Shown in pieces: positions 20,958 to 35,479 of a stretch of DNA of 64,000 nucleotides. Origin of the DNA: Mytilus californianus (taxonomy: Eukaryota). The notes under the pieces are model-generated. The model did no database searches and was not told the origin of the DNA. It saw nothing but the letters and a program-made list of their open reading frames with translations. The stretch spans positions 62,744,001 to 62,808,000 of the forward strand of contig NW_026262712.1 of NCBI RefSeq assembly GCF_021869535.1. Direction: 5' to 3'. The first letter of the stretch is position 1, and each line of letters begins with the position of its first letter. The translations under genes were made by a program, and so were the position numbers.

Positions 20958-23849
20958 CTGTTATAAAAATATAGTTCATGAGAAAAGCATACATGTAAAA
21001 AACAATCAAATTGTCGAAAGTCATGCGTATACGAAGATGAGAGCAATCATCACGTTCACATCAAGTCAGCTTAAAAAGTATAATGTATTAAAAAATATCT
21101 GTTCAGTTTTCTGAACGGCAATCTGAACGGCAAATACGAGTAATGTTAGCTTGGAGAAGAGACTTGGTTGTAGACTGGTCATACCTATTGAATTGTATGC
21201 AATAAATTCTTGTTTTGATGGTTTGCTTTGGTTTGTATAGTTTCAGAAGTATACTAAATTCGCATAAAAACTTGAGAATTTTTACGGTTGACATAACAAG
21301 TATCCAGATAACAATTTAACAAATAGATTAAACTGCTTTTTATGATTCATTTTTATACACTCGAGTCAATACTAGATTTTACTACTTGTAAGCAATCCAG
21401 GCTTACAATCCTCAGGCACTAGTCTCAGTAAAAAATTATATGTATACCTTTATTTAACACAACCTTCTATAAAGTTTCTTGAAACTAATATCAATTCTTC
21501 CAATGACAAAAATAGGCGTGTGATAAACCCCGTTTTGCAAATTATTTAATGTTGATTTAGAACATAACAAGTTTCAGTGGGATAGACATCCTCTGAATCA
21601 AAATATAACGGGAGTAGCGACCGAGTGTCATTTTTCAAAAATAAGAGTTGTGCACCTTGTGTTATATTAGGTTATATATGTAAAAAAAAATCTTTTGCAT
21701 TGTTAATCATTAAAATATATATATATTTTGCACTGTTTGTTCATTGCTCCACACTCGAAATTATAAATTATAGAAACATACAGGATACAGTGTGTGTTGG
21801 AGAGGAGTTAATTATTTCATATCTAAGAAAAAACGTTCGAAAATTTCAATAATGAAGATATAATGAATATAAGCAATTACGAACATTTAAATGTATAGTG
21901 AGAAGCAAAGACTAACTTGGCATCAAGGAACTAGCCAAGTTTATTCATTCTTGATTTCAGCTAAAGGCAAAGCTGTGCAGAAAAAAAATATGTATTACAA
22001 TATACAAATTTTATTTTCCCTAAAAAGCTTTAAAGGTGCTTTGCAGTATCATAAAGTATGCCAGTTTTGTTACTTTGTTTATTTGTGGGATTCTGCGGAT
22101 TAGGTGGAGTTTTTTGTTCATTTTAAACCTTTAATTAATTTCTTATACTGTCATTACTAAAAGTTCCAGTTATATAATTACTACTAATATGACACAAGTA
22201 CAACTAAACCGGCTCGTGAACCATAATGACAGTCTGTAATGTCGGTATTGGAAATCTTTCAAATGCAGAGAATAGCGTCAAACACCTCTCAATTTTTTTA
22301 ATAAGTTAAAAATGTTAAATTTATCCATCACATTTTTTATTATCAGGCCATCGGGTCGATGTATAATTGAATATGTTATACCGGTCTATAGTGTGCAGAC
22401 CATAACTATGTTGAACTCTAGATGGTTTTGTTTTGTGTGTCATAGTGTTGCTGCTTGATTGAAATATACCCTTTTATTCATATCCATGCTTTTATTTGTC
22501 ATGAAATTTTCAACATTATTTAGAAAATCTTTGATTTTTAAAATTTCCTCTGTTCACATTTTAATGCTGATGGTTCTAAATATGAAAAAAAGTATAAAAA
22601 AAATTCTCAACTCCAAGGCAAATTCAAAGAGGGGAGGTCCATAAATTCTAACAAAATTAAACGCTTTGAAACAACGGAACAAGTGAAAAACTACTGCCAT
22701 ATTCCCGACTTGGTACAGGCATTTCCTAAGAAAACGGTTGGTTAAACCTGGTTTTATAGCTAGCTAAACCTCCCGCGTGTATGACAGTTGTTTATAGTTC
22801 CGTTATATTGACAAATTTGGGTAAGCACCCCAAACAGACATAATAGGTTAATGTGACAATAATTGGGATCCAGCAGTCAACAATGTATAAACATGTTTCA
22901 CAGACATACAACACCACTAACTAAAAAATCCAAACAAACATACAAATTAATCTAACAAAAAAGGTGTAGTAAATAGTAATAACTCATCATAGATGCCAAG
23001 ACCAAAACTTTATACGCCAGACGCCAGACTTGCGTTTCATCTACAAAAGACTCATCAGTGACGTAAATTAGACAATGACGTCACCACCAACAAAAACGTT
23101 TTTGTCGTTGATGTTACATACCGTATATAATACTAGTATAAATTTTCTCGATAAAGGGAAAATTAATTAAATAAAAACACAAGGGTAAACAAAATAGACA
23201 CACCACTATAACAACCTTATGTGTCCAAATCCACTCTAAGACATAAGCCCGGATTTACTAATATATTTCTACAAATTTATCTCAGCATGTTATCATTAAT
23301 CTGTTATAGATAAATTATGTGGTCACACTTTCTTTAGGATTCACTAATTATAACCAGATGTCAGTAAACCACAAAATGTACAAGAACTTTATCAGAAAAT
23401 GTTTTTGTATAAATCAAATATTATTCTGTTTTTTCTGTCCAGGTTTCATCGTGGTATTTTCAAGTCTTTCTGAAAAAAAATATGAAATTTGAAAAAAAAA
23501 GTTATTATTAAAAATGAAAATTAATAATACTAAGATAAAAGTATGAAAAATTTAGTTTATTTCAATATTATGGACAGCCTTCCCCCATTCATATGCAATA
23601 ATTTTGTTCATCAACTGTAGATATTTATTCCTAATATTTATTAAACTTAAAAAAACATACAATATAAAATGTATAAAATTAATGGTACCTTTAATCTAAA
23701 TTAACTTTGTATTGACTTATTAATAAATATTTTTTTCTCATTTTTGATATAAACTACATTTATTCAAACTGTTGTTAAAGTGATTTCTGAGAAAAAAAAA
23801 TAATGCTATATACGATTAGCCAAACCTTGACAAAGTATTTGATCTATAT

Positions 23850-24106
23850 CATAGGTACTTAGGGACAGGACAACTTTTAAACCCTCCCTCTTTTTTCCAA
23901 ATTATTTTATTTTGCATTAATTTAAAATATTTTCATATTTTTCTGTATTATGCAGACATAAATGTGTTAGAAATAACTTTTATTTGCTATTTGCTATCAA
24001 TTCCAACCTTTCTATCCACAGCGTGAAATTAATAGAAAACAAAACAAACGGATGTTTGCAAAAAAGGGGGAGGGCAAAAAGATTGTTCTGTCCCCAAGTA
24101 CCTATG
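23850..24106. mobile_element. Small MITE nested in the 3' region of the Academ-like element
   Basis: TIRs CATAGGTACTTAGGGACAGGACAA and reverse complement CATAGGTACTTGGGGACAGAACAA (22/24), flanked by AT on both sides. Confidence 0.7.
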
Positions 24107-24188
24107 ATCTACGCATGATGGAGCTATATTTCTAAATTCAAAATGATTTCTAAAATTCAAGAACAATGTATAATAATTAAATTTAAAC

Positions 24189-27100
24189 TTACTTTGGAGA
24201 AGATGCTTGAGGTTTTAGCTTCCATTTCTTTGGCGTTGTGGAGTCCTAGGGATTTTTCTCTTTGGCAATTTCTTTTTGGCTAAATTCATCTTCTGCAGTA
24301 GTTCATTTTCAGGGAACAAAAGTTTTCCCTTTATGTCTTTAGCAAAAGATTCAGGTCCAAAGTTGTATTCAATTTCCCCAGACTGCAATTTTAGTAGATA
24401 TCCCTCAACAAGAAACTCCGGCATTGGTTCAAATTGAAGACCTGCTGACAGGTAATACTGTATGAGACAATCTACATTTTTTGCAAGTGTTTAAACAACA
24501 CATTTAGGTGGCATCCACAGTTGAGCATTTTGCTGGACTCCTTTACTCCTCAAGGTTGGCATTTTTATAGACATCTGACGTACTTCTTCGTATGTAAGTT
24601 TTGATGCGTCATACAGCTTTGGACAGTAAAGATATTTGATGAACTCTGTATAATGATCTGCATCAAAATTTACAGAAACAACTTTCCCTTCCTTAGTATG
24701 AATGGTAACTAAACCTTCTCTGAATGTTGTCTTCCTCATAAAAAGGTCAACTGTTGAAGAATGAGAAATCTGGTAGAACTCTGGCAAAAAGTCATTCCCT
24801 CCTAAACTTAATATAATGGCATTCTTCATTCCAATAAACTTTTCTGATGTGAAATTTTCTATCATTAAAATTATTTTAGTTACGTTGTAAATGTCATAGA
24901 CCTGATTTGGTTTTCTAAGGATGACGTAAACTTCATTTTTGAATGTCCCATTTTCTGTTCCCGGCCAAAGATGTGATACTGCAAACAAATGAACTACAAC
25001 GGCATCAATATCTCCTGATAAAACAATACTAACACATGATTCTTTAGGTTTGAGACTGTTGCAATATTCCATTAGCCAGTCAATCTGTGACATCTCAGCT
25101 TCTCCTTTATTTTGACGGATACTGTCCAATAAATCATGCTCTTGATATCCACCTACTTCTTTGAATACAGCACGAACTGGTGTACAGAAACAATGGCAGG
25201 TACATTTCCTTTTTTTCACAATTACACGGTGTCATTTGCAGCTCACTGTCTATGTCCAAAGTGATGGTTTGCTTTAGTCTAACTGCGTTATGTTCTTTGC
25301 TAGATAAGTGCTTGTAATAACCTTTCCTTCTGTTGTTGATATAAGGGATGTTTTATCAACTTTTTCAGCACTAAGTACTTCTTCTGCGGTCTTAAGGTGT
25401 GATTGTTTTTGGTTTGTTTTCCTCTGAGCTTTAAAGTCATCAGGGGTGAAATTGTACTTTTCTTCACAGATCGCAAGATGCTTTAGAAGGGGAAGTTGAT
25501 GTTTAATCTTTTCTACAACATCTTTTCCAATATAATTCAGATATTCATTTCCTGTATGTGCAAAAGATGAAAATTTGATTCCTGCAAATTCTAATGTAGC
25601 ATATGTTGTAGAGCTGGCTAAAGATGGAAGAATAACTTTGCTACCTAGAATGACTGTTCCGTCACTTTCTAGCTTTCCCTTTCCATTGTCTTCGTCAAGG
25701 TGTTGTTGTTCCTGGTTGGTATAAGTTTGGATTATGATACTTAAAAGGGCCTTTTGAATGCTCTGTGATTTCTGTACTTTGGGTTTTGAGCAATCTGGCT
25801 TTACTATAGATTGACAAAGATTCATCTGTGATGATATATGATTGATTTGTTTGGACTGTTTTGCAACTTCTTTATTTCTTTTATCTTCTTTAATTTCTCT
25901 TTCTGTTTTTGCTGTCTGTTGTCTCTTTAATGGGATGTGGCGAATTGTAACTCCTTTTGATTGCTTAAGATTTTGTACCAAAGTTTTTGGACCTGTTATG
26001 TTGCTTAAATCAGGAATGTCTGTTTTGTCAAAGGCAAATAAATTATTGTTGGCAACATACTTTTTAATTAAAAATTCACCAGCTTCTTTTGAATGTTGAT
26101 CAAGAATTGATTCTGGAAGATTATCAGGTTTAGGTTCGTACATGTTATATAAATTCTTGTTTGGTATAGTTGATATTCCTCCTCGTCTTAATATCAGACC
26201 TGTAATTCGCAGAATGTATACCATATCAGTTCAATTTAAAGTTATGCCTAGTATGTCTGGTAGAGACTTTTCTTTTTCTTTATGTTCATTATCTTTTTCT
26301 GTAATACTTCTGTGAACATCATTTAAGAGTCAATCAATGACATTCGTGGTACAACCGATTCCATTGTAGCGCCGGACCTAAATGCTTTTATAACATCTTG
26401 ATGATCCATCTCTCTCTGTGCATCAAGGGCAAAATTTGTACCGGTACCTTTGTGGGGAATAGTAAACAATGCCATTTTCATATTCTTGTAGAAAGGACCA
26501 CACTTGAGATGTGCATGTAGCAGTTTAGTGCAGTAGGCTGCATATGATGATGCACCATTCAGAAAAGAAATGGTAATGATGACTTCACAGCTGCCAGCAA
26601 TAAGTGGTAACCATTCCTCCCTCCTAGTCTCTCTGACAATGCAATGGCACTTATTTCGTCATAATGTTCCATCATATCAGCATGTAAGGCAAACGTTCCA
26701 TTTCTTGATTTTCCTTTCTCCATAAACTCTTGCAATTGAAGTTCCCACTTAGATCCTACAGTATTATTAGCCAGAATATCTTTTTGAAAGGCTTCTGCTT
26801 CTTGTAAGGAAAGAGTTTGCATGAAGGAACAAATGAATGCCAAGTGAAGTGACAAAGAAAGGCGACGAATGTACTTTGTTGCTTTATCAATGTGGTCAGA
26901 GTTGATCAGTTTCTTCCAGTCTTTAACATCATCATCACGCATATATTTAAGTATATGAATGAGACCTGCATGTTGGTATGCACTGCAAAGGTTGTTTATT
27001 TTGGATTTTCTAAGAAGCAGTAAAGGGAACTCTGGCAGAAAGTTTTCGTACTGTTTGTTCTGTTCTCTAAGTTTTATCAAATTACTTCCTATTTTGTTGT

Positions 27101-27473
27101 CAGGGCAACAGAGGATCTTTTCATGATTATGAAGGTTACTTGCATGATCAGTCTTGACAAGAATGTCATCAAGTGTCTGCCTCAACTTTCCAATGTCGTC
27201 ATCCCTTCCAGTAGCTGGTGGCGGATGAAGTGTCAACATCACAGGTGGTGTAAATTGCTCAAAACCTAAAGTTCTTAGAATATGGTCCTGTTTGTCATCT
27301 TCTTCGTCATATAAAATGGGTGTGATATCAAATGAATCATCTAGTGACATGTTCTGGAAATCAGGAATGTCTGTTCTGTCGATCTCAAGGTCTGTATCAA
27401 GAGCTTCAAGTTCTATATCTATTCCATCAAAAATTTCTTCCAACTCATTCTCTCTTTCTTCTTCATCATCAAC
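24189..27473 (-). pseudogene. Academ-like transposase gene, exon 3, duplicated copy
   Basis: Paralogous to 28320-31608 and preceded by a partial exon 2 (27827-27966). Private lesions near 26570, 26325, 26230, 25215, 24491 and 24235. Confidence 0.8.
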
Positions 27474-27979
27474 CTGTAAAGACATATCATATCCCTTTAA
27501 AGGATTGAAATAGTTGCCACTTGATTACAATCATATGTGTGTTCCAAAAAAATATACATTGCAATTTTTCAGTTAATGAGTAATTCAAATATGCTAATTC
27601 TTATCAATTAAGAAAAGGGATGGATGATAACGGTTCATATATGTACCTAATGCTATTTTTTAGATAATAATTCTCCATGGTTTATAGACAGGTACTGAAA
27701 GTAATCATAAGAGTTTCCTTAAAAATTAAAAAGTTCTGAAATGACACGTGTCGGACTTATCATTACATATTAAATAGTCTTTATCGAATATGAATTTGTA
27801 ATTCAGTCAGTTTATTATGACTATACCTGGTTATAGTAGTCGATGGTCTTATTGACATCTTCCTCTGGTGTGCAGGGAGTTAAAGCAGGTGAGCCTGGAG
27901 CGTCCACAACAACAAGATGTGAAAAAGATACTTCAAGCTCTTGTTCAGGTTCAGAAGCAGGGTCGTATTTGATCTATAT

Positions 27980-28236
27980 CATAGGTACTTAGGGACTTTT
28001 AAACTTTTAAACCCTCCCTCTTTTTTCCAAAATATTTTATTTTCCATTAATTTAAAATATTCATACTTTTCTGTATTATGCAGACATCAATGTGTTAGAA
28101 ATAACTTTTTTTTTGCTATTTGCTATCAATTCCAACCATTCTATCCACAGCGTGAAATTAACAGAAAACAAAACAAACGGATGTTTGTAAAAAAGGGGGA
28201 GGGCAAAAAAAATTATTCTGTCCCCAAGTACCTATG
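27980..28236. mobile_element. Duplicated copy of the nested MITE
   Basis: Same as 23850-24106, with the left TIR partly eroded. Confidence 0.7.
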
Positions 28237-28319
28237 ATCTACGCATGATGGAGCTATATTTCTAAATTCAAAATTGATTTCTAAAATTCAATAACAATGT
28301 ATAATAATTAAATTTAAAA

Positions 28320-31300
28320 TTACTTTGGAGTAGATGCTTGAGGTTTTGACTTCCATTTCTTTGGCTTTTGTGGAGTCCTAGGGGTTTTTCTATTTGGCAA
28401 TTTCTTTTTGGCTAAATTCATCTTCTGCAGTAGTTCATTTTCAGGGAACAAAAGTTCTCCCTTTATGTCTTTAGCAAAAGATTCAGGTCCAAAGTTGTAT
28501 TCAATTTCCCCAGACTGCAATTTTAGTAGACATCCCTCAACAAGAAACTCCGGCATTGGTGCAAAATGAAGACCTGCTGACAGGTAATACTGTATGAGGC
28601 AATCTACATTTTTTGCAAGTGTTTGAACAACACATTTAGGTGGCATCCACAGTTGAGCATTTTGCTGGACTCCTTTACTCCTCAAGGTTGGCATTTTTAT
28701 AGACATCTGACGTACTTCTTCGTATGTAAATTTTGATGCGTCATACAGTTTTGGACAGTAAAGATATTTGATGAACTCTGTATAATGATCTGCATCAAAA
28801 TTTACAGAAACAACTTTCCCTTCCTCAATATGAATGGTAACCAAACCTTCTCTGAGTTTTGTCTCCCTCATAAAAAGGTCAACTGTTGAAGAATGAGAAA
28901 TCTAGTAGAACTTCGGCAAAAAGTCATTCCCTCCTAAACTTAATATAATGGCAATCTGCATTCCAATAAACTTTTCTGATGTGAAATTTTCTATCATTAA
29001 AATTATTTTAGTTATGTTGTAAATGTCATAGACCTGATTTGGTTTTCTAAGGATGACGTAAACTTCATTTTTGAATGTCCCATTTTCTGTTCTCGGCCAA
29101 AGATGTGATACTGCAAACACATGAACTACAACGGCATCAATATCTCCTGATGAAACAATACTAACACATGATTCTTTAGGTTTGAGACTGTTGCAATATT
29201 CCATTAGCCAGTCAATCTGTGACATCTCAGCTTCTCCTTTATTTTGACGGATACTGTCCAATAACTCATGCCCTTGATATCCACCTACTTCTTTGAATAC
29301 AGCACGAACTGGTGTACAGAACCAATGGCAGGTACATTTCCTTTTTTCACAATCACACGGTGTCATTTGCAGCTCACTGTCTATGTCCAAAGTGATGGTT
29401 TGCTTTAGTCTAACTGCGTTATGTTCTTTGCTAGATAAGTGCTTGCAATTACCTTTCCTTCTGTTGTTGATATTAGGGATGTTTTATCAAATTTTTCAGC
29501 ACTAAGTACTTCTTCTGCGGTCTTAAAGTGTGAAATTGATTGTTTTTGGTTTGTTTTCCTCTGAGCTTTAAAGTCATCTACAGGGGTGAAATTGTACTTT
29601 TCTTCACAGATCGCAAGATGCTTTAGAAGGGGAAGTTAATGTTTGATCTTGCCTACAACATCTTTTCCAATATAATTCAGATATTCATTTCCTGTATGTG
29701 CAAAAGATGAAAATTTGATTCCTGCAAATTCTAATGTAGCATATGTTGTAGAGCTGGTTAAAGATGGAAGAATAGCTTTGCTACCTAGAATGACTGTTCC
29801 GTCACTTCTAACTTTCCCTTTCCATTGTCTTCGTCAAGGTGTTGTTGTTCCTGGTTGGTATAAGTTTGGATTAAGATACTTAAAAGGGCTTTTTGAATGC
29901 TCTGTGATTTCTGTACTTTGGGTTTTGAGCAATCTGGCTTTACTATAGATTGACAAAGATTCATTTGTGATGATATATGATTGATTTGTTTGGACTGTTT
30001 TGCAACTTCTTTATTTCTTTTATCTTCTTTAATTTCTCTTTCTGTTTTTGCTGTCTGATGTCTCTTGAATGGGATGCGGCGAATTGTAACTCCTTTTGAT
30101 TGCTTATGATTTTGTACCAAAGTTTTTGGACCTGTTATGTTGCTTAAATCAGGAATGTCTGTTTTGTCAAAGGCAAATAAATTATTGTTGGCAACATACT
30201 TTTTAATTAAAAATTCACCAGCTTCTTTTGAATGTTGATCAAGAATTGATTCTGGAAGATTATCAGGTTTAGGTTCGTACATGTTATATACATTCTTGTT
30301 TGGTATAGTTGATATTCCTCCTCGTCTTAATATCAGACCTGTAATTCGCAGAATGTATACCATATAAGTTGAATTTAAAGTTATGCCTAGTATGTCTGGT
30401 AGAGACTTTTCTTTTTCTTTATGTTCATTATCTTTTTCTGTAATACTTCTGTGAACAGCATTTAAAGAGTCAATCAATGACATTCGTGGTATTATCGATT
30501 CCATTGTAGCGCCGGACCTAAATGCTTTTATAACATCTTGAAGATCCATCTCTCTCTCTGCATCAAGGGCAAAATTTGTACTGCTACCTTTGTGGGGAGT
30601 AGTAAACAATGACATTTTCATATTCTTGTAGAAAGAACCACACTTGAGATGTGCATGTAGCAGTTTAGTGCAGTAGGCTGTATATGATGATGCACCATTC
30701 AGAAAAGAAAATGGTAATGATGACTTCACAGCTGCCAGCAATAAGTGGTAACCATTCTTTCCTCCAAGTCTCTCTGACAATGAAATGGCACTTATTTCGT
30801 CACATTGTTCCATCATATCAGCATGTAAGGCAAACGTTCCATTTCTTGATTTTCCTCTCTCCATAAACTCTTGCAATTGAAGTTCCCATTTAGATCCTAC
30901 AGTATTATTAGCCAGAATATCATTTTGAAAGGCTTCTTGTAAGGAACGAGTTTGCATGAAGGAACAAATGAATGCCAAGTGAAGTGACAAAGAAAGGCGA
31001 CGAATGTACTTTTTTGCTTTATCTATGTGGTCAGAGTTGATCAGTTTCTTCCAGTCTTTAACATCATCATCACGCATATATTTAAGTATATGAATGAGAC
31101 CTGCATGTTGGTATGCACTGCAAAGGTTGTTTATTTTGGATTTTCTAAGAAGCAGTAAAGGGAACTCTGGCAAAAAGTGTTCGTACTGTCTGTTCTGTTC
31201 TCTAAGTTTTATCAAATTACTTCCTATTTTGTTGTCAGGGCCACAGAGGATCTTTTCATGATTATGAAGGTTACTTGCATGATCAGTCTTGACAAGAATG

Positions 31301-31608
31301 TCATCAAGTGTCTGCCTCAACTTTCCAATGTCGTCATCCCTTCCAGTAGCTGGTGGCGGATGAAGTGTCAACATCACAGGTGGTGTAAATTGCTCAAAAC
31401 CTAAAGTTCTTAGAATATGGTCCTGTTTGTCATCTTCTTCGTTATATACAATGGGTGTGATATCAAATGAATCATCTAGTGACATGTTCTGGAAATCAGG
31501 AATGTCTGTTCTGTCGATCTCAAGGTCTGTATCAAGAGCTTCAAGTTCTATATCTATTCCATCAAAAATTTCTTCCAACTCATTCTCTCTTTCTTCTTCA
31601 TCATCAAC
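28320..31608 (-). pseudogene. Academ-like transposase gene, exon 3, copy contiguous with the 5' exons (transposase core and PIN/XRN-like nuclease)
   Basis: cttttcag acceptor. Motifs LCGPDNK, EFPLLLLRK, FALDAERE, EFAGIKF, ICEEKY, KGEAEM, SSGDIDA, LGGNDFLP, WMPP. Frameshifts near 29806 and 29410; stops at 29636-29638 and 28902-28904. Confidence 0.8.
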
Positions 31609-31961
31609 CTGAAAAGACATATCATATCCCTTTAAATGATTGAAATAGTTGCCACTGGATTACAATCATATGTGTGTTCCAAAAAATTATACATTGCAAT
31701 GTTTCAGTTAATGAGTAATTCAAATATGCTAATTCTTATCAATTAAGAAAAGGGATGGATGATAACGGGACATATATGTACCTAATGCTATTTTTTAGAT
31801 AATAATTCTCCATGGTTTATAGACAGGTACTGAAAGTTATCATAAGAGTTTCCTTAAAAATTAAAAAGTTCTGAAATGACACGTGTCGGACTTATAATGA
31901 CATATTAAATAGTCTTTATCGAATATGTATTTGTAATTCAGTCAGTTTATTATGACTATAC

Positions 31962-32197
31962 CTGGTTATAGTGGTCGATGGTCTTATTGACATCTTCCTC
32001 TGATGTGCAGGGAGTTACAGCAGGTGAGCCTGGAGCGTCCACAACAACAAGATGTGAAAAAGATACTTCAAGCTCTTGTTCAGGTTCAGAAGCAGGGTCG
32101 TTCACTCTAAAGCTTGAAAATGATTCTTCTAAATTCTGATTTTCTGGCTCCTCAATTTCCCTTTGCATTTGAACTTTGATGGTATTCTAAATTCCTT
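31962..32197 (-). pseudogene. Academ-like transposase gene, coding exon 2 (acidic linker)
   Basis: tttcag acceptor and GTATAG donor; 236 nt, phase 1 to 0; premature TAG at 32187-32189. Confidence 0.7.
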
Positions 32198-32643
32198 CTG
32201 AAATTAAAAATTGATTGGTTTTTAGTTTTATGAATGAGCTTTTTTTATATTATAATATGACCTTCTTATTGTTAGCTAAAAGAAAATGGTCTTTCTTTTG
32301 CTTAAATATTTAGTTTTTCCATTCTTATTTTATGAAATCAAGATGAAACTATTACCGTGAAATGATAACTTGCAAAGATGGAAAATAATCTTTTAAACAC
32401 AAAAATGAAAAAAAAAATATCTGATTTAATTCATTAAATTCTGATTCATGACATAATCTTAACAATGGTTTAACTTCATTTCGGAAGAGTAAGAGAAATG
32501 CCAGTTCAGTTTATGCATGCATTTTGCTCTCAAACAAAGCAAAAAATGATAATGTTTTTGTCATGAATATGCATGAAATATTTGCTGCTGGACATTAATC
32601 ATATATTAATCTATTTAACATTTAGATGAGGTAAAGTACTTAC

Positions 32644-34531
32644 TTTCAAAGACCTCAGTCCATAAAGTTGGCAATCCCCAGGTAAACAATTGATGGCACC
32701 TTGTTAGCACTCTCTTCTCCTCAGCATTTAGACATAATACTTCGGTCTCAAAATCTGTTTTCTGCAACTCTATGTCTTCTTTACATTTGCATGTAGTTGT
32801 CCCATCGCATATAGTGTGATCATGCCAATTTTCTATTTCTTTTGCTTCTTTTGGAATTCCTTTGATTGTAATAGGTAAGGTACCTATCTGCATAGATCTA
32901 GATTCCCCTGGTTCTGGGTCCTTGTGATATTTAAGTCGTACCAAACTGTTCATCATAATAATTATTATACAATCTCGGAGGCTGACTTTGACTTTTTCTA
33001 TTCCTGCTGCAGTTTCGTACAACATTTCATATTTCCTCAGGTAGGTATTGAAGTAGCAGAAATCGCTATTTGCCTTTTCTTTCATCCTCTGCTCGCTCTC
33101 ATGTAAGCTTAATGTTGCTCCGGAAAAAGATGTTACAGAAGACACTGTGTTGATTGACTGATAGTTCATTGCAAGTTCTTGTGAGTTGGCATCTTGAAGA
33201 AGTCAAATATAATTTGTGTTTGTCAAATTTAAGAGGGAGTCAAACAAACTATATAATTTCCTAAGCTTTAAATTCAAAAGTTGGCCTACATTTTCTGATT
33301 TTCTTAAACTTTCTTTGTTGATGTAGCTCTCTAATATAATCTGACCAATAACTGGTACACCCATTGTCCATTCTTTCAATATATCAAAAGATGTCCAGTC
33401 TAATGACTCTATTGTGCTTGTTCCGTAACAGGACAGTTTGATGAAGAAACATCGTTTTCAAAATCCGTATCAGCTACTTGCTATACATGAAATATTTGTT
33501 CATTTAGTATTTTCATCATTATATTGTCCCGCAACTCAATCGTACAGTTCTGCCAAATTTGTCGGTATACAATTCAAATGCACCTTTACTGAGAAATATA
33601 ATTTCAGCACAGTTATCGTTGTGTTTTTTTCTTATATGCGCATCAAAAAGAAGACAGATATCTGAAATTTGTACTTCAGTTAAATCACCAGATTCTACAA
33701 AAAGATGAAGTGCAGGAGGATGCTTACAAGTACGTGTACAGTCAACAGAAATTACTTTGTCTATTGCGAAATTTTCTGGTATCAAATTAAGAAGTTGTGC
33801 ATCTAGAACCTCTGGAAAATGCCTCTTGTTTCCCACAATTGAAACGGCTTCTTCGCATTGACTTTTTTTCCTTCTCTGAATTCTTTCAACAGTGCTTAAT
33901 TTTGAAGATTTTAAAAGTATAGACTGAACTTCACAAGCTTCCTTCAAACTGTCTAAGAATTTTGATTTTTGTTCAACGAGTTTTTCATAATTATCTAAAT
34001 CATGGTAGTAATTGCTCTTCCCAAAATGGTGTTCAAATAAACAGATTTTCTTCCATTCCAAATTATTAAAGTCATCTTTATAGTTGTTAATTAAAGTGTC
34101 TATTTGAGATTCGTCTATTTCTAGTGTTTGCAGAATATGGTTTTCTATATTTTCACTTCGGTAAAAGGTTTTTACAACTTTGACGTAGATATCTTTTATT
34201 GTAAGTTCACTTGATATATTTTTTCCAAAGCATTTCTTTTCAATTTGGTGCACAATTTTCTTACAAATATAGAGGTGTTCAGTGTGATGGAAACAATATC
34301 TTAATATAGATGATCTTACACTTATACGGAAATGACCATCAACTTCTTTTAAACCATTAAAAACTCCTTTTGCACATTCAATTTTTTTATGTCCCTAATC
34401 TTATCTGAGGGGCGGTGTTGGTTACGCAAAAACAAAAGAAAATCTTCTAGTTAAACCCATTTGTTTTCTAAGTCATTTTCATCATGGTGAATTGTTAGTG
34501 AACTAAATGAAGGGATGCTGCAAGATTCCAT
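32644..34531 (-). pseudogene. Academ-like transposase gene, coding exon 1 (disrupted)
   Basis: ATG at 34531 just after a ttgtag acceptor; stop at 34451-34453; frameshift in an A7 run near 34385; further lesions near 33530, 33420 and 33207; GTAAGT donor at 32643. Includes track ORFs 33519-34253 and 32615-33169. Confidence 0.7.
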
Positions 34532-35479
34532 TTCTACAAAAAGCAGAGGTAAATATGTCATTTTACATGTTACATGGTTTAGCGTTTGGTGTCATTTGTA
34601 AGTCCCTTGTCCAAAAAAATCTATTTGATTATAAGAAATGACAATATTAATTATACCTCCAAATTACCATCCCTCTTATACCCCATAAATAATACATGAG
34701 TTTTCTTCTATAACACCCTTCTTATTATTGACAACCATAATTATGTCATTCATATTCTAAAAAATGTGTAATATTTGCTACTGTGCATAAAAAATTAACA
34801 TTTACTCTAGTAATTGATTTCTGGCATTACCTATAATAAATTACATTAAAAAAAATAATCCCATTTGCACAAGGATTTGTATCCTTGCATTTGCAATATT
34901 AACATTAATTATAATATAATTACCTTAATAGTTTTCTTTTTTCATGTCAACCTCTGTCTCCAGCTTTCACATCAAATTTTAAGAAGTCTTCAAATCTTTT
35001 TCTATTTCTATATTAATAATCACTACAAATCATTTATACACATTTATAACTGTACTATAAAATAAATGCTGAAGATAGTATATATTAAGTAATATGATAT
35101 GCATGTGACCAGTTATTCAGGAGATTAAGATAAACAAACCCAGCATGATACATGGTCTGGGGTAATTGGCATTTACATGATGTCTGATAAGACCACAGCT
35201 ACAAAGTAGCTGTAGATTCGGGCTTATATCTTAGAGTGAATCGCACCTCAGGACACATCTGCACCAGGAATGCGACACACAGTTAAAAAGCCAAAAGCTA
35301 GCCGATGGCGGATAAAAGCCGAGTCACGTCAAAAGACATACTACCGAAAGAAACACAATAGCACGAAGACAAATAGCGGTGAAAATAAAATCAAATAAAA
35401 AGATACACGACTTCAGTACCTAGAATCTAAAACTCAAGACCATCTTGTATTATTTGTGAAGTAGACACTGAATATTTAT

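What the first reader, a model, noticed from the sequence alone, without database searches (positions are those of the whole stretch)
28320..29740. Fused nuclease module looks XRN-like, has an internal Cys cluster and lacks the C-terminal Cys8 finger
Seen: five spaced acidic motifs, ATLEFAGIKF, AICEEKY, KGEAEM, SSGDIDA and LGGNDFLP, supplying seven acidic residues. Established: FEN1/XPG/XRN PIN-fold nucleases use seven acidic residues in this order. XRN1/2 read DMNGII, GEGE, GLDAD and VGNDFLP, whereas XPG-type enzymes read GCDY/GSDY. GNDFLP is an exact XRN match and EFAGI resembles DMNGI. A cluster PCDCEKRKCTCH.FC precedes GEAE, and the protein ends in a basic NLS-like tail with no terminal Cys8 finger. 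Inferred: a transposase carrying an XRN-like 5'-3' nuclease, perhaps independently captured or used for end processing.
Basis: partly seen in the sequence, partly recalled or inferred. Interest (0 to 1): 0.75.

Follow-up and report, generated by a model that had tools for sequence, protein, structure and literature searches.

The report
Transposase-fused 5′ nuclease, XRN/FEN type
The flagged stretch is the broken tail end of a 12-kb mussel DNA transposon, and that tail encodes a metal-dependent 5′ nuclease of the FEN1/XPG/XRN fold fused to a DDE transposase, which is the known AcademX layout in a diverged form that sits between XRN and XPG.

Summary
All five acidic motifs, the Cys cluster and the basic tail are at the stated coordinates on the minus strand. 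They lie in two reading frames and are interrupted by three stops and two frameshifts. A second decayed copy lies 4.1 kb away in a tandem duplication.

- **Conservation:** the motifs are invariant, with fixed spacing, in 26 intact mollusc relatives. These are proteins of up to 1,901 aa with no Pfam hit.
- **Transposase:** the upstream part folds as an RNase H-type DDE transposase, closest to P element, Tn5 and Hermes.
- **Element:** it has 27-bp terminal inverted repeats and a 4-bp target-site duplication, as reported for AcademX.

Verdict: a diverged AcademX-type nuclease module. Independent capture from an XRN gene is untested. The same scan noted an AcademX element elsewhere in this genome.

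The parts
23228..23231 (.). Target-site duplication AATC, left flank
   Evidence: Read directly. It is identical to 35239-35242.
23232..23258 (+). Terminal inverted repeat on the 3′ side of the gene, CACTCTAAGACATAAGCCCGGATTTAC
   Evidence: Inverted repeat pair I6, 30 nt, 87% complementary. The 20-nt core matches only the two ends of the element, with 0 expected by chance.
23845..24111 (.). MITE-like inverted-repeat insert downstream of the ORF. It is repeated at 27975-28241 inside the duplicated unit.
   Evidence: 57-nt arms, 82% complementary, 153 nt apart (pairs I1-I3).
23835..27964 (-). Tandem duplication unit, copy A. It covers aa ~800-1900 of the protein plus the 3′ region.
   Evidence: Direct repeats 92-98% identical with a period of about 4130-4140 bp. 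The junction is mapped by alignment.
24227..25600 (-). Nuclease module, copy A. It reads in one frame with in-frame stops. EFAG 25571-25600, EEKY 25454-25474, GEAE 25091-25108, SGDID 25001-25021, GGNDF 24782-24805.
27965..32098 (-). Tandem duplication unit, copy B
28320..29803 (-). Nuclease module, copy B (the finding). EFAG 29711-29740, EEKY 29594-29614, CxC..CxC 29325-29357, GEAE 29223-29240, SGDID 29133-29153, GGNDF 28914-28937, basic tail 28320-28400. Broken by three stops and two frameshifts.
29872..31494 (-). C-terminal half of the DDE core plus the all-helical insertion domain, copy B. The second D is in GPDNKIG 31222-31242 and the E in EREMD 30544-30558. The copy A equivalent is 26329-27359.
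   Evidence: tblastn to P0063 aa 847-1384, 49% identity. Motif coordinates. Fold.
32660..33433 (-). N-terminal half of the RNase H-fold core (beta1-beta3). The position of the first catalytic Asp reads Asn here (MMNSLVR 32936-32956, against the family's LMLDNLVR).
33534..34310 (-). N-terminal region of the protein (aa ~72-332 of P0063). Its function was not examined.
   Evidence: tblastn, 31% identity.
35212..35238 (-). Terminal inverted repeat on the 5′ side of the gene
35239..35242 (.). Target-site duplication AATC, right flank

Best explanation
The finding is the decayed C-terminal module of a 12,007-bp cut-and-paste DNA transposon in a mussel (Mytilus-type) genome. Intact relatives encode one protein of about 1,800-1,900 aa. 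It has an RNase H-fold DDE transposase core, which is split by an acidic disordered linker and carries an all-helical insertion domain. The last ~530 aa form a metal-dependent 5′ nuclease of the FEN1/XPG/EXO1/XRN (PIN-like) superfamily.

This is the AcademX architecture: transposase plus nuclease with 3-4-bp target-site duplications. The nuclease is a deep, Pfam-invisible branch of that superfamily. It is XRN-like in size, in motif spacing and in the GNDFLP motif. It is Rad2/FEN1-like in GEAE, in a GIS hairpin after the last Asp, and in a short gateway helix followed by a low-confidence arch.

Inferred mechanism: the DDE core nicks and transfers the 3′ ends, while the fused 5′ nuclease cuts or trims the non-transferred 5′ strand, or 5′ flaps and gaps, on DNA at the transposon ends. 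That would be a two-nuclease division of labour like TnsB/TnsA of Tn7.

Both copies in this window are dead. They carry stops and frameshifts, a 12-nt loss in the gateway helix, and Asn in place of the first catalytic Asp of the transposase.
For: **Family conservation**
- The motifs are invariant with fixed spacing in 26 homologues.

**Nuclease fold**
- The AlphaFold2 model has pLDDT 86 and pTM 0.86.
- The second look gives EXO1 14.3, FEN1 14.0, XRN1 12.2 and XRN2 11.9.
- Foldseek's top 22 PDB hits are XRN1/XRN2/Rat1, E 1e-6 to 7e-4. In the viral library, giant-virus XRNs rank ahead of viral FEN/XPG.
- By DSSP the acidic residues lie at the end of strand 65-71, just after strand 108-112, at the start of helix 244-254, between strand 264-269 and helix 276-287, and between helices 332-342 and 356-365.
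- Spacing and motif comparison with real XRN2, XRN1 and FEN1 sequences.

**Transposase fold**

**Element structure**
- Terminal inverted repeats plus a 4-bp target-site duplication.
- AcademX is reported to make 3-4-bp duplications and to encode a nuclease (PMC10045372).
- Academ elements are greatly expanded in bivalves (PMC10294476).
- The Academ RNase H domain has no Pfam model (PMC5751038).

**Decay of the window copies**
-.
Against: - No sequence comparison with Repbase Academ proteins was possible, so AcademX membership rests on architecture and duplication length only.
- No Pfam XPG_N, XPG_I or XRN_N hit in any of 26 members, even at E up to 10. No PDB hit to XRN or FEN with the family profile.
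- Motifs 1 and 2 use Glu where cellular FEN and XRN enzymes use Asp.
- The module is internal to a long protein, whereas cellular members carry it at the extreme N-terminus.
- The substrate and the role in transposition are inference.
Confidence: 0.7

Rival explanations
1. This bivalve lineage captured an XRN-type gene independently. On this reading the module descends from a cellular or viral XRN 5′-3′ exoribonuclease rather than from the XPG-type nuclease of canonical AcademX, and it may act on 5′-phosphate RNA or single-stranded DNA as a processive exonuclease.
For: - Foldseek puts XRNs first in two libraries.
- About 335-347 residues align with XRN against about 240-270 with the Rad2 family.
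- GNDFLP is identical to XRN2.
- The motif 3 to 4 spacing is 30, as in XRN and unlike FEN1's 21. The motif 4 to 5 spacing is 71, as in C. elegans XRN2.
- 3 of 26 members read GEGE.
- No Pfam XPG signal.
Against: - There is no Pfam XRN_N signal either.
- Most members read GEAE, and a FEN1-like GIS hairpin follows the last Asp.
- The helix after motif 2 is short (12 residues) and is followed by low-confidence segments. That looks like a FEN arch rather than the long XRN tower helix, which I recall from my own knowledge.
- Vertical divergence inside an old superfamily explains the mosaic more simply.
Confidence: 0.17
2. The module is a catalytically silent scaffold or nucleic-acid-binding domain (a pseudo-nuclease). 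It would be kept for end recognition or transpososome assembly, not for cutting.
For: - Glu replaces Asp at motifs 1 and 2.
- The domain is not at a free N-terminus as it is in cellular enzymes.
- No biochemical data exist.
Against: - Eight carboxylates, the gateway Lys and Arg seven residues apart (K124, R131), and GGNDF are invariant across sequences only about 40% identical. That is the pattern expected of an active site.
Confidence: 0.06
3. It is not a transposon protein but a host gene family, or a domesticated gene, that happens to lie between inverted repeats.
For: - Many database entries are annotated as ordinary 'uncharacterized protein' genes of Mytilus, Dreissena, Mya and Mercenaria.
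Against: - Hundreds of diverged and mostly fragmentary copies: 526 clusters at 50% identity.
- Intron-less ORFs of 5.5-5.7 kb on short contigs.
- Terminal inverted repeats with a 4-bp duplication exactly bounding the coding region.
- A DDE fold.
- This copy is a pseudogene.
Confidence: 0.03

Closest known systems
AcademX DNA transposons (Academ superfamily; Kapitonov & Jurka 2010, Kojima 2020; cited through PMC10045372)
   Same: One long protein with a DDE transposase followed by a FEN/XPG-superfamily nuclease. Terminal inverted repeats. A 4-bp target-site duplication, where AcademX is reported to give 3-4 bp. No Pfam model for the transposase core. Large expansion in bivalves.
   Different: The nuclease is not recognised by Pfam XPG_N or XPG_I. 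It reads GNDFLP with XRN-like motif spacing. It carries an internal CxC..CxC insert and ends in a basic TPQK...STPR tail without a Cys-rich finger. Direct homology to Repbase Academ could not be tested.
XRN1 / XRN2 (Rat1) 5′-3′ exoribonucleases
   Same: Same fold and the best Foldseek hits. About 340 residues superpose. GNDFLP is identical. The Glu pair to Asp pair spacing is 30. The Asp pair to last Asp spacing of 71 equals that of C. elegans XRN2. A gateway Lys and Arg lie seven residues apart.
   Different: About 10-13% identity and no XRN_N profile hit. Mostly GEAE rather than GEGE. Glu rather than Asp at motifs 1 and 2. The module is at the C-terminus of a transposase, not the N-terminus. 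No long tower helix is predicted. The likely substrate is DNA.
Rad2/XPG family (EXO1, FEN1, XPG, GEN1)
   Different: Motif spacing is longer (30 against 21, and 71 against 52). GNDF replaces GSDY or GCDY. There are about 200 extra residues, including a beta-hairpin with a Cys knuckle. No XPG_N or XPG_I profile hit.
Tn7 TnsB + TnsA (a DDE transposase plus a separate nuclease for the 5′ strand)
   Same: A functional analogy only: two different nuclease active sites in one transposition machine, one for each strand.
   Different: TnsA has a restriction-endonuclease fold and is a separate polypeptide. Here the second nuclease has a FEN/XRN fold and is fused. The analogy is an inference and was not shown.
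P element, Hermes (hAT) and Tn5 transposases
   Different: No sequence similarity is detectable. There is an extra acidic disordered segment of about 220 aa inside the fold. None of these transposases has a fused 5′ nuclease.

Membership tests
FEN/XRN (PIN-like) 5′-nuclease superfamily | PIN-like alpha/beta fold with a helical arch and a helix-hairpin-helix module | tested here: met
FEN/XRN (PIN-like) 5′-nuclease superfamily | Seven or so carboxylates in fixed order at strand ends and helix starts | tested here: met
   E71, E113/E114, E243/E245, D273/D275 and D346 are invariant in 26 sequences. By DSSP they sit at the expected topological positions. Their 3D distances were not measured because no coordinates were available.
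FEN/XRN (PIN-like) 5′-nuclease superfamily | Gateway helix after motif 2 with Lys and Arg seven residues apart | tested here: met
   K124 and R131 are invariant and R128 nearly so. Compare XRN2 DGVAPRAKMNQQRSRR. The window copies have lost 12 nt here that other copies in the species retain.
FEN/XRN (PIN-like) 5′-nuclease superfamily | Recognition by curated sequence profiles (Pfam XPG_N, XPG_I, XRN_N, 5_3_exonuc) | tested here: not met
   No hit for the window pieces, for full-length homologues, or for any of the 26 modules at E up to 10. The family profile against PDB sequences finds no nuclease.
XRN family | GNDF(L/I)P motif carrying the last Asp | tested here: met
   LGGNDFLP at 28914-28937 and 24782-24805. 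GGNDF is invariant. Solved XRN2 structures read FFVGNDFLPHLP.
XRN family | GEGE motif, and 30 residues between the Glu pair and the Asp pair | tested here: inconclusive
   The spacing is 30, as in C. elegans XRN2 (E204 to D234) and unlike FEN1's 21. However, 23 of 26 members read GEAE and only 3 read GEGE.
XRN family | Closest structural neighbour | tested here: inconclusive
XRN family | Processive 5′-phosphate-dependent exoribonuclease activity | not testable with these tools
   This needs biochemistry.
Rad2/XPG family | GSDY or GCDY motif followed by a GIG hairpin, with 21 and 52-residue motif spacing | tested here: not met
   The family reads GGNDF..GIS with spacings of 30 and 71. Human FEN1 reads LLGSDYCESIRGIGPK, with E158, D179 and D233. 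Only the hairpin is similar.
AcademX (Academ superfamily) | Terminal inverted repeats with a 3-4-bp target-site duplication | tested here: met
   27-nt repeats at 23232-23258 and 35212-35238, flanked by AATC on both sides. The criterion comes from PMC10045372.
AcademX (Academ superfamily) | A single protein combining a DDE transposase and an XPG-type nuclease | tested here: met
   RNase H-fold core and a FEN-superfamily module in one ORF of 1,791-1,901 aa. 'XPG-type' holds at the level of fold only.
AcademX (Academ superfamily) | Sequence homology of the transposase core to Repbase Academ families | not testable with these tools
   No Academ reference sequences were reachable. The Kojima 2020 and Yuan & Wessler 2011 papers are not held.
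   It is absent from all 26 family members. Whether it defines AcademX could not be checked.

The most novel reading that the evidence does not exclude
Academ-type transposases recruited a 5′ nuclease more than once. On this reading the bivalve lineage carries an XRN-derived module, possibly shared with the giant-virus XRN and alloherpesvirus Allo54 proteins that top the viral fold search. Canonical AcademX would carry an XPG-derived one. The module would work as a 5′-phosphate-dependent exonuclease on the nicked donor strand rather than as a flap endonuclease.
Probability: 0.17. Interest if true: 0.6.

Novelty: new variant of a known kind. Interest (0 to 1): 0.4.

Why it matters
How DDE transposases deal with the second DNA strand is the main mechanistic divide among cut-and-paste elements. 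Known solutions are a hairpin, a second subunit, or a second enzyme. Academ is one of the least studied superfamilies and has no biochemistry.

This work shows that a very abundant bivalve lineage fuses the DDE core to a full-size, well-conserved 5′ nuclease. That nuclease is invisible to Pfam and sits between XRN and Rad2/XPG. The result gives a concrete, foldable protein, such as the natural intact relative P0063, on which a two-nuclease model can be tested.

It also flags a large family of unannotated mollusc 'uncharacterized proteins', some of them mis-binned into symbiont metagenome-assembled genomes, as transposases. The copy in this window has no function.

Tried and rejected
**Searches that found nothing**
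- Pfam on every window piece, on five full-length homologues and on all 26 modules.
- phmmer and the family profile against PDB sequences. The only hits were IpgC and geminin, both spurious.
- Word-indexed profile search with the module alignment. All 111 hits belong to the same mollusc family, with no bridge to XRN or XPG.
- Foldseek alone on the transposase model was not significant, with Hermes at E about 0.2. The VIA search was needed.

**Papers and supplements**
- Kojima 2020 and Yuan & Wessler 2011 are not held.
- No held paper mentions both Academ and XPG.
- The curated bivalve Class II library in the supplement of PMC10294476 is stored with SINE content. PMC5751038 has no supplements held.

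**Intact relatives**
- I looked for terminal repeats on the contigs of intact relatives L001 and L002. None were found, probably because the contigs stop short of the ends. P0063's contig returned no DNA.

An intact natural homologue was folded instead.
- Model coordinates are not exposed, so carboxylate distances could not be computed.

**Method note**
The numbers quoted are those printed for the targets.
Full report
**What is in the window**

The window is AT-rich eukaryotic DNA (GC about 32%). Its closest protein matches are from Mytilus coruscus, M. edulis and M. galloprovincialis.

- ATLEFAGIKF 29711-29740
- AICEEKY 29594-29614
- CDCEKRKCTCH 29325-29357
- KGEAEM 29223-29240
- SSGDIDA 29133-29153
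- LGGNDFLP 28914-28937
- a basic tail ending at 28320

These strings do not form one ORF. The first two motifs are in a different frame from the rest. The module carries a frameshift near 29803-29872, a stop in KIKH*LPLLKH (29618-29650), a stop after NITQLD (29408-29425), a second frameshift just after that stop, and a stop at 28902-28904.

A second copy of the module lies at about 24227-25600, with the same motifs and its own in-frame stops. The two copies are the halves of an exact tandem duplication, units 23835-27964 and 27965-32098, which are 92-98% identical.

**The element**

A tblastn of the closest full-length relative (P0063, 1,901 aa) maps the gene along 34310 to 24227 on the minus strand.
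- aa 72-628 map once, at 34310-32660.
- aa 847-1900 map twice, once in each duplication unit.

The coding region is bounded by 27-nt terminal inverted repeats at 23232-23258 and 35212-35238. Their core, CACTCTAAGAYATAAGCCCG, occurs nowhere else in the window, with 0 matches expected by chance. The repeats are flanked on both sides by AATC (23228-23231 and 35239-35242).

So this is a 12,007-bp cut-and-paste transposon with a 4-bp target-site duplication. That agrees with the earlier first-stage note s1-282012. Without the duplication it would be about 7.9 kb.

**The family**

A profile of the C-terminal ~350 aa finds 526 clusters at 50% identity (201 below 1e-30) among 1.84 billion representatives. 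The domain is always at the C-terminus of proteins of up to 1,791-1,901 aa.

The named sources are all molluscs: Mytilus, Dreissena, Mya, Mercenaria, Ruditapes and the limpet Patella. Two further entries are filed under the clam symbiont Candidatus Thiodiazotropha and are most likely host DNA.

None of these proteins has a Pfam domain.

In 26 intact modules with about 40% mean identity, the following are invariant (numbering of P0063:1353-1901):
- E71-F-A-G
- E113-E114-K-Y
- T119-P120
- K124, T127, R131
- Q-x-K-G-E243-x-E245
- S-x-D273-I-D275
- G-G-N-D346-F

The spacing is fixed at 41, about 127, 29 and about 72 residues, counted from motif start to motif start.

The Cys cluster is a CxC...CxC insert in 23 of the 26 members and missing in 3. 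No member has a C-terminal Cys-rich finger. All end in a conserved KR..TPQKG.RRK..TSTPR tail.

**Fold of the nuclease module**

I folded the intact natural relative P0063:1353-1901 with alignment A2. The model has pLDDT 86 and pTM 0.86.

|---|---|---|
| EXO1 | 13.5 | 266 |
| FEN1 | 12.5 | 237 |
| XPG | 12.2 | 237 |
| GEN1 | 12.1 | 244 |
| XRN1 | 12.1 | 346 |
| Rat1 | 10.9 | 321 |
| T5 exonuclease | 10.6 | 243 |
| T4 RNase H | 9.1 | 215 |
| ExoIX | 8.2 | 217 |

The eukaryotic and archaeal enzymes align from their residue 1-5 onto model residue 19-23. The bacterial and phage enzymes start at model residue 63-65. So the module has the eukaryote-type N-terminal helix.

By DSSP the invariant carboxylates sit where the superfamily's active-site residues sit (the comparison to the canonical positions is from my own knowledge of FEN1 and XRN1 structures):
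- at the end of strand 65-71
- right after strand 108-112
- at the start of helix 244-254
- between strand 264-269 and helix 276-287
- in the hairpin between helices 332-342 and 356-365

The caveat is that I could not measure distances, because model coordinates are not exposed.

**XRN-like or XPG-like?**

The evidence is genuinely mixed.

For XRN:
- Foldseek's first 22 PDB hits are XRN2, XRN1 and Rat1 (E 1.1e-6 to 6.5e-4). FEN1, Rad2, EXO1 and T5 FEN follow.
- In the viral library, about 20 giant-virus XRNs (E 1.5e-6 to 4e-4) precede viral FEN/XPG proteins (E 7e-4 and weaker). The top hit is the alloherpesvirus protein Allo54.
- About 335-347 residues superpose on XRN, against about 240-270 on Rad2-family enzymes.
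- Solved XRN2 structures read FFVGNDFLPHLP, so GNDFLP is an exact match.
- The motif spacings match XRN rather than FEN1, as shown below.
- Three members read GEGE.

Motif spacing, using residue numbers printed for real PDB sequences:

| Protein | Glu pair to Asp pair | Asp pair to last Asp |
|---|---|---|
| This family | 30 (E243 to D273) | 71 (D275 to D346) |
| C. elegans XRN2 | 30 (E204 to D234) | 71 (D236 to D307) |
| Human XRN1 | not derived | 84 (D208 to D292) |
| Human FEN1 | 21 (E158 to D179) | 52 (D181 to D233) |

For Rad2/XPG:
- 23 of 26 members read GEAE, closer to FEN1's SEAE than to GEGE.
- After GNDFLP the family reads K-F-x-G-I-S-H-x-K. This lines up with FEN1's S-I-R-G-I-G-P-K-R hairpin and not with XRN2's H-L-P-S-L-E-I-R-E.
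- The helix after motif 2 is only 12 residues long and is followed by low-confidence segments. That looks more like a FEN arch than the long XRN tower helix. The description of the tower helix is from my own knowledge.

Against both:
- No Pfam XPG_N, XPG_I or XRN_N match in any member, even at E up to 10.
- No XRN or FEN hit with the family profile against PDB sequences.
- Glu rather than Asp at motifs 1 and 2.
- The module is internal rather than at a free N-terminus.

I read it as a deep branch of the eukaryote-type FEN/XRN superfamily, XRN-like in size and spacing. It is not a member of either curated family.

**The transposase**

P0063:430-1352 was folded with 63 homologues. The model has pLDDT 73.8 and pTM 0.76, and residues 217-435 form a disordered acidic linker.

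Foldseek alone is not significant, with Hermes at E about 0.2. The exhaustive VIA search gives:
- ISCth4, RAG1, Mos1, Mu and TnsB further down

So the upstream part is an RNase H-fold DDE enzyme with a large all-helical insertion at model residues 562-714.

The conserved residues in the right places give a candidate catalytic triad. This assignment is inferred.
- D532, directly after the first core strand. It corresponds by offset to HIV-1 integrase D64.
- D930, directly after strand 496-498.
- E1162, on helix 728-740.

In the window copy the first of these reads Asn (MMNSLVR, 32936-32956).

**Comparison with the known**

The literature reachable here says the following.
- AcademX elements encode a nuclease and make 3-4-bp target-site duplications, while AcademH elements encode a helicase and make 9-10-bp ones (PMC10045372).
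- The Academ RNase H domain has no Pfam counterpart (PMC5751038).
- Academ is strongly expanded in bivalves and is among the longest DNA elements there (PMC10294476).
- That the AcademX nuclease is called 'XPG' and is fused to the transposase is from my own recollection of Kojima 2020, which is not held.

The architecture, the repeats and the duplication length here all fit AcademX. Direct homology to Repbase Academ could not be tested, so I give about 70% to membership.

Another first-stage note (s1-312245) reports an intact AcademX with an 'XPG/FEN1' nuclease elsewhere in this genome. I could not see that sequence.

**Likely mechanism (inferred)**

The DDE core exposes and transfers the 3′-OH ends. 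The fused 5′ nuclease handles the complementary 5′ strand or the 5′ flaps and gaps at the ends, much as Tn7 splits the two strands between TnsB and TnsA.

The invariant carboxylates and gateway residues argue for a working active site. Which substrate it takes, and whether it is exo- or endonucleolytic, needs biochemistry.

**State of this copy and reads**

Both modules in the window are dead.

Contigs of DNA runs of the same organism label carry related copies that differ at informative places:
- an extra G behind 29407
- 12 extra nucleotides behind 29564, which restore the ATRA segment of the FKAATRxQR gateway helix that is conserved in the family
- a 3-nt difference at 29578

So the window copy is a decayed member of a family that has more complete copies in the species.

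The duplication junction 27964|27965 is not bridged by any listed contig of runs X1 or X2. Both sides run on into the unduplicated context. The duplication may therefore be private to the assembled individual or an assembly artefact.

RNA support is negligible. Two reads laid from about 6% of one raw RNA-seq run, and low-depth contigs 95-99% alike appeared in one 'mollusc metagenome' RNA run.

**Verdict**

This is a diverged variant of a known kind (AcademX), with moderate interest.

Noticed in passing
window 23835-27964 and 27965-32098: An exact 4.13-kb tandem duplication inside the transposon. It covers the 3′ ~55% of the gene plus the 3′ region. Its left breakpoint lies 10 bp before a MITE-like inverted repeat. 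The junction 27964|27965 is not bridged by contigs of two other DNA runs, so it may be private to the assembled individual or an assembly artefact.
   Followed up: partly
window 23845-24111 and 27975-28241: A MITE-like insert of about 270 bp with 57-nt inverted arms (82% complementary), just downstream of the transposase stop. It was copied along with the duplication.
   Followed up: no
C-terminal tail, window 28320-28400; family alignment A2, last ~30 columns: The conserved tail KR..TPQKG.RRK..TSTPR has two S/T-P-x-K/R sites flanking a basic cluster. It looks like a CDK-regulated nuclear localisation signal, which could tie nuclear entry of the transposase to the cell cycle.
   Followed up: no
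fold search: The best viral structural match of the nuclease module is Allo54 (E 5.9e-7). Allo54 proteins of fish herpesviruses (lake sturgeon herpesvirus, cyprinid herpesvirus 2) and uncharacterized proteins of ranid herpesviruses 3 and 4 are all hit. This suggests that these proteins are FEN/XRN-fold nucleases.
   Followed up: no
proteins P0014 and P0028: Two family members are deposited as proteins of 'Candidatus Thiodiazotropha' metagenome-assembled genomes (clam gill symbionts). They are almost certainly host transposon DNA mis-binned into the symbiont genomes.
   Followed up: no
window 32936-32956: The position of the first catalytic Asp of the transposase reads Asn in this copy (MMNSLVR against the family's LMLDNLVR). 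The transposase part is therefore inactivated as well.
   Followed up: yes
P0063 aa ~646-864 (model residues 217-435); window ~31500-32660: An acidic, poorly conserved and predicted-disordered segment of about 220 aa is inserted inside the RNase H fold. It lies between the first three strands and the rest of the core, which is an unusual place for a linker.
   Followed up: no
alignment A2 columns 1-40; window ~29875-29960: A conserved Cys-containing stretch (C..S..MN.CQA.VKPDCSKPKVQKS.GI..AL) precedes the nuclease. Its end resembles the MGIxGL N-terminus of cellular FEN and XRN enzymes. It might mark a processing site or a small metal-binding linker.
   Followed up: no
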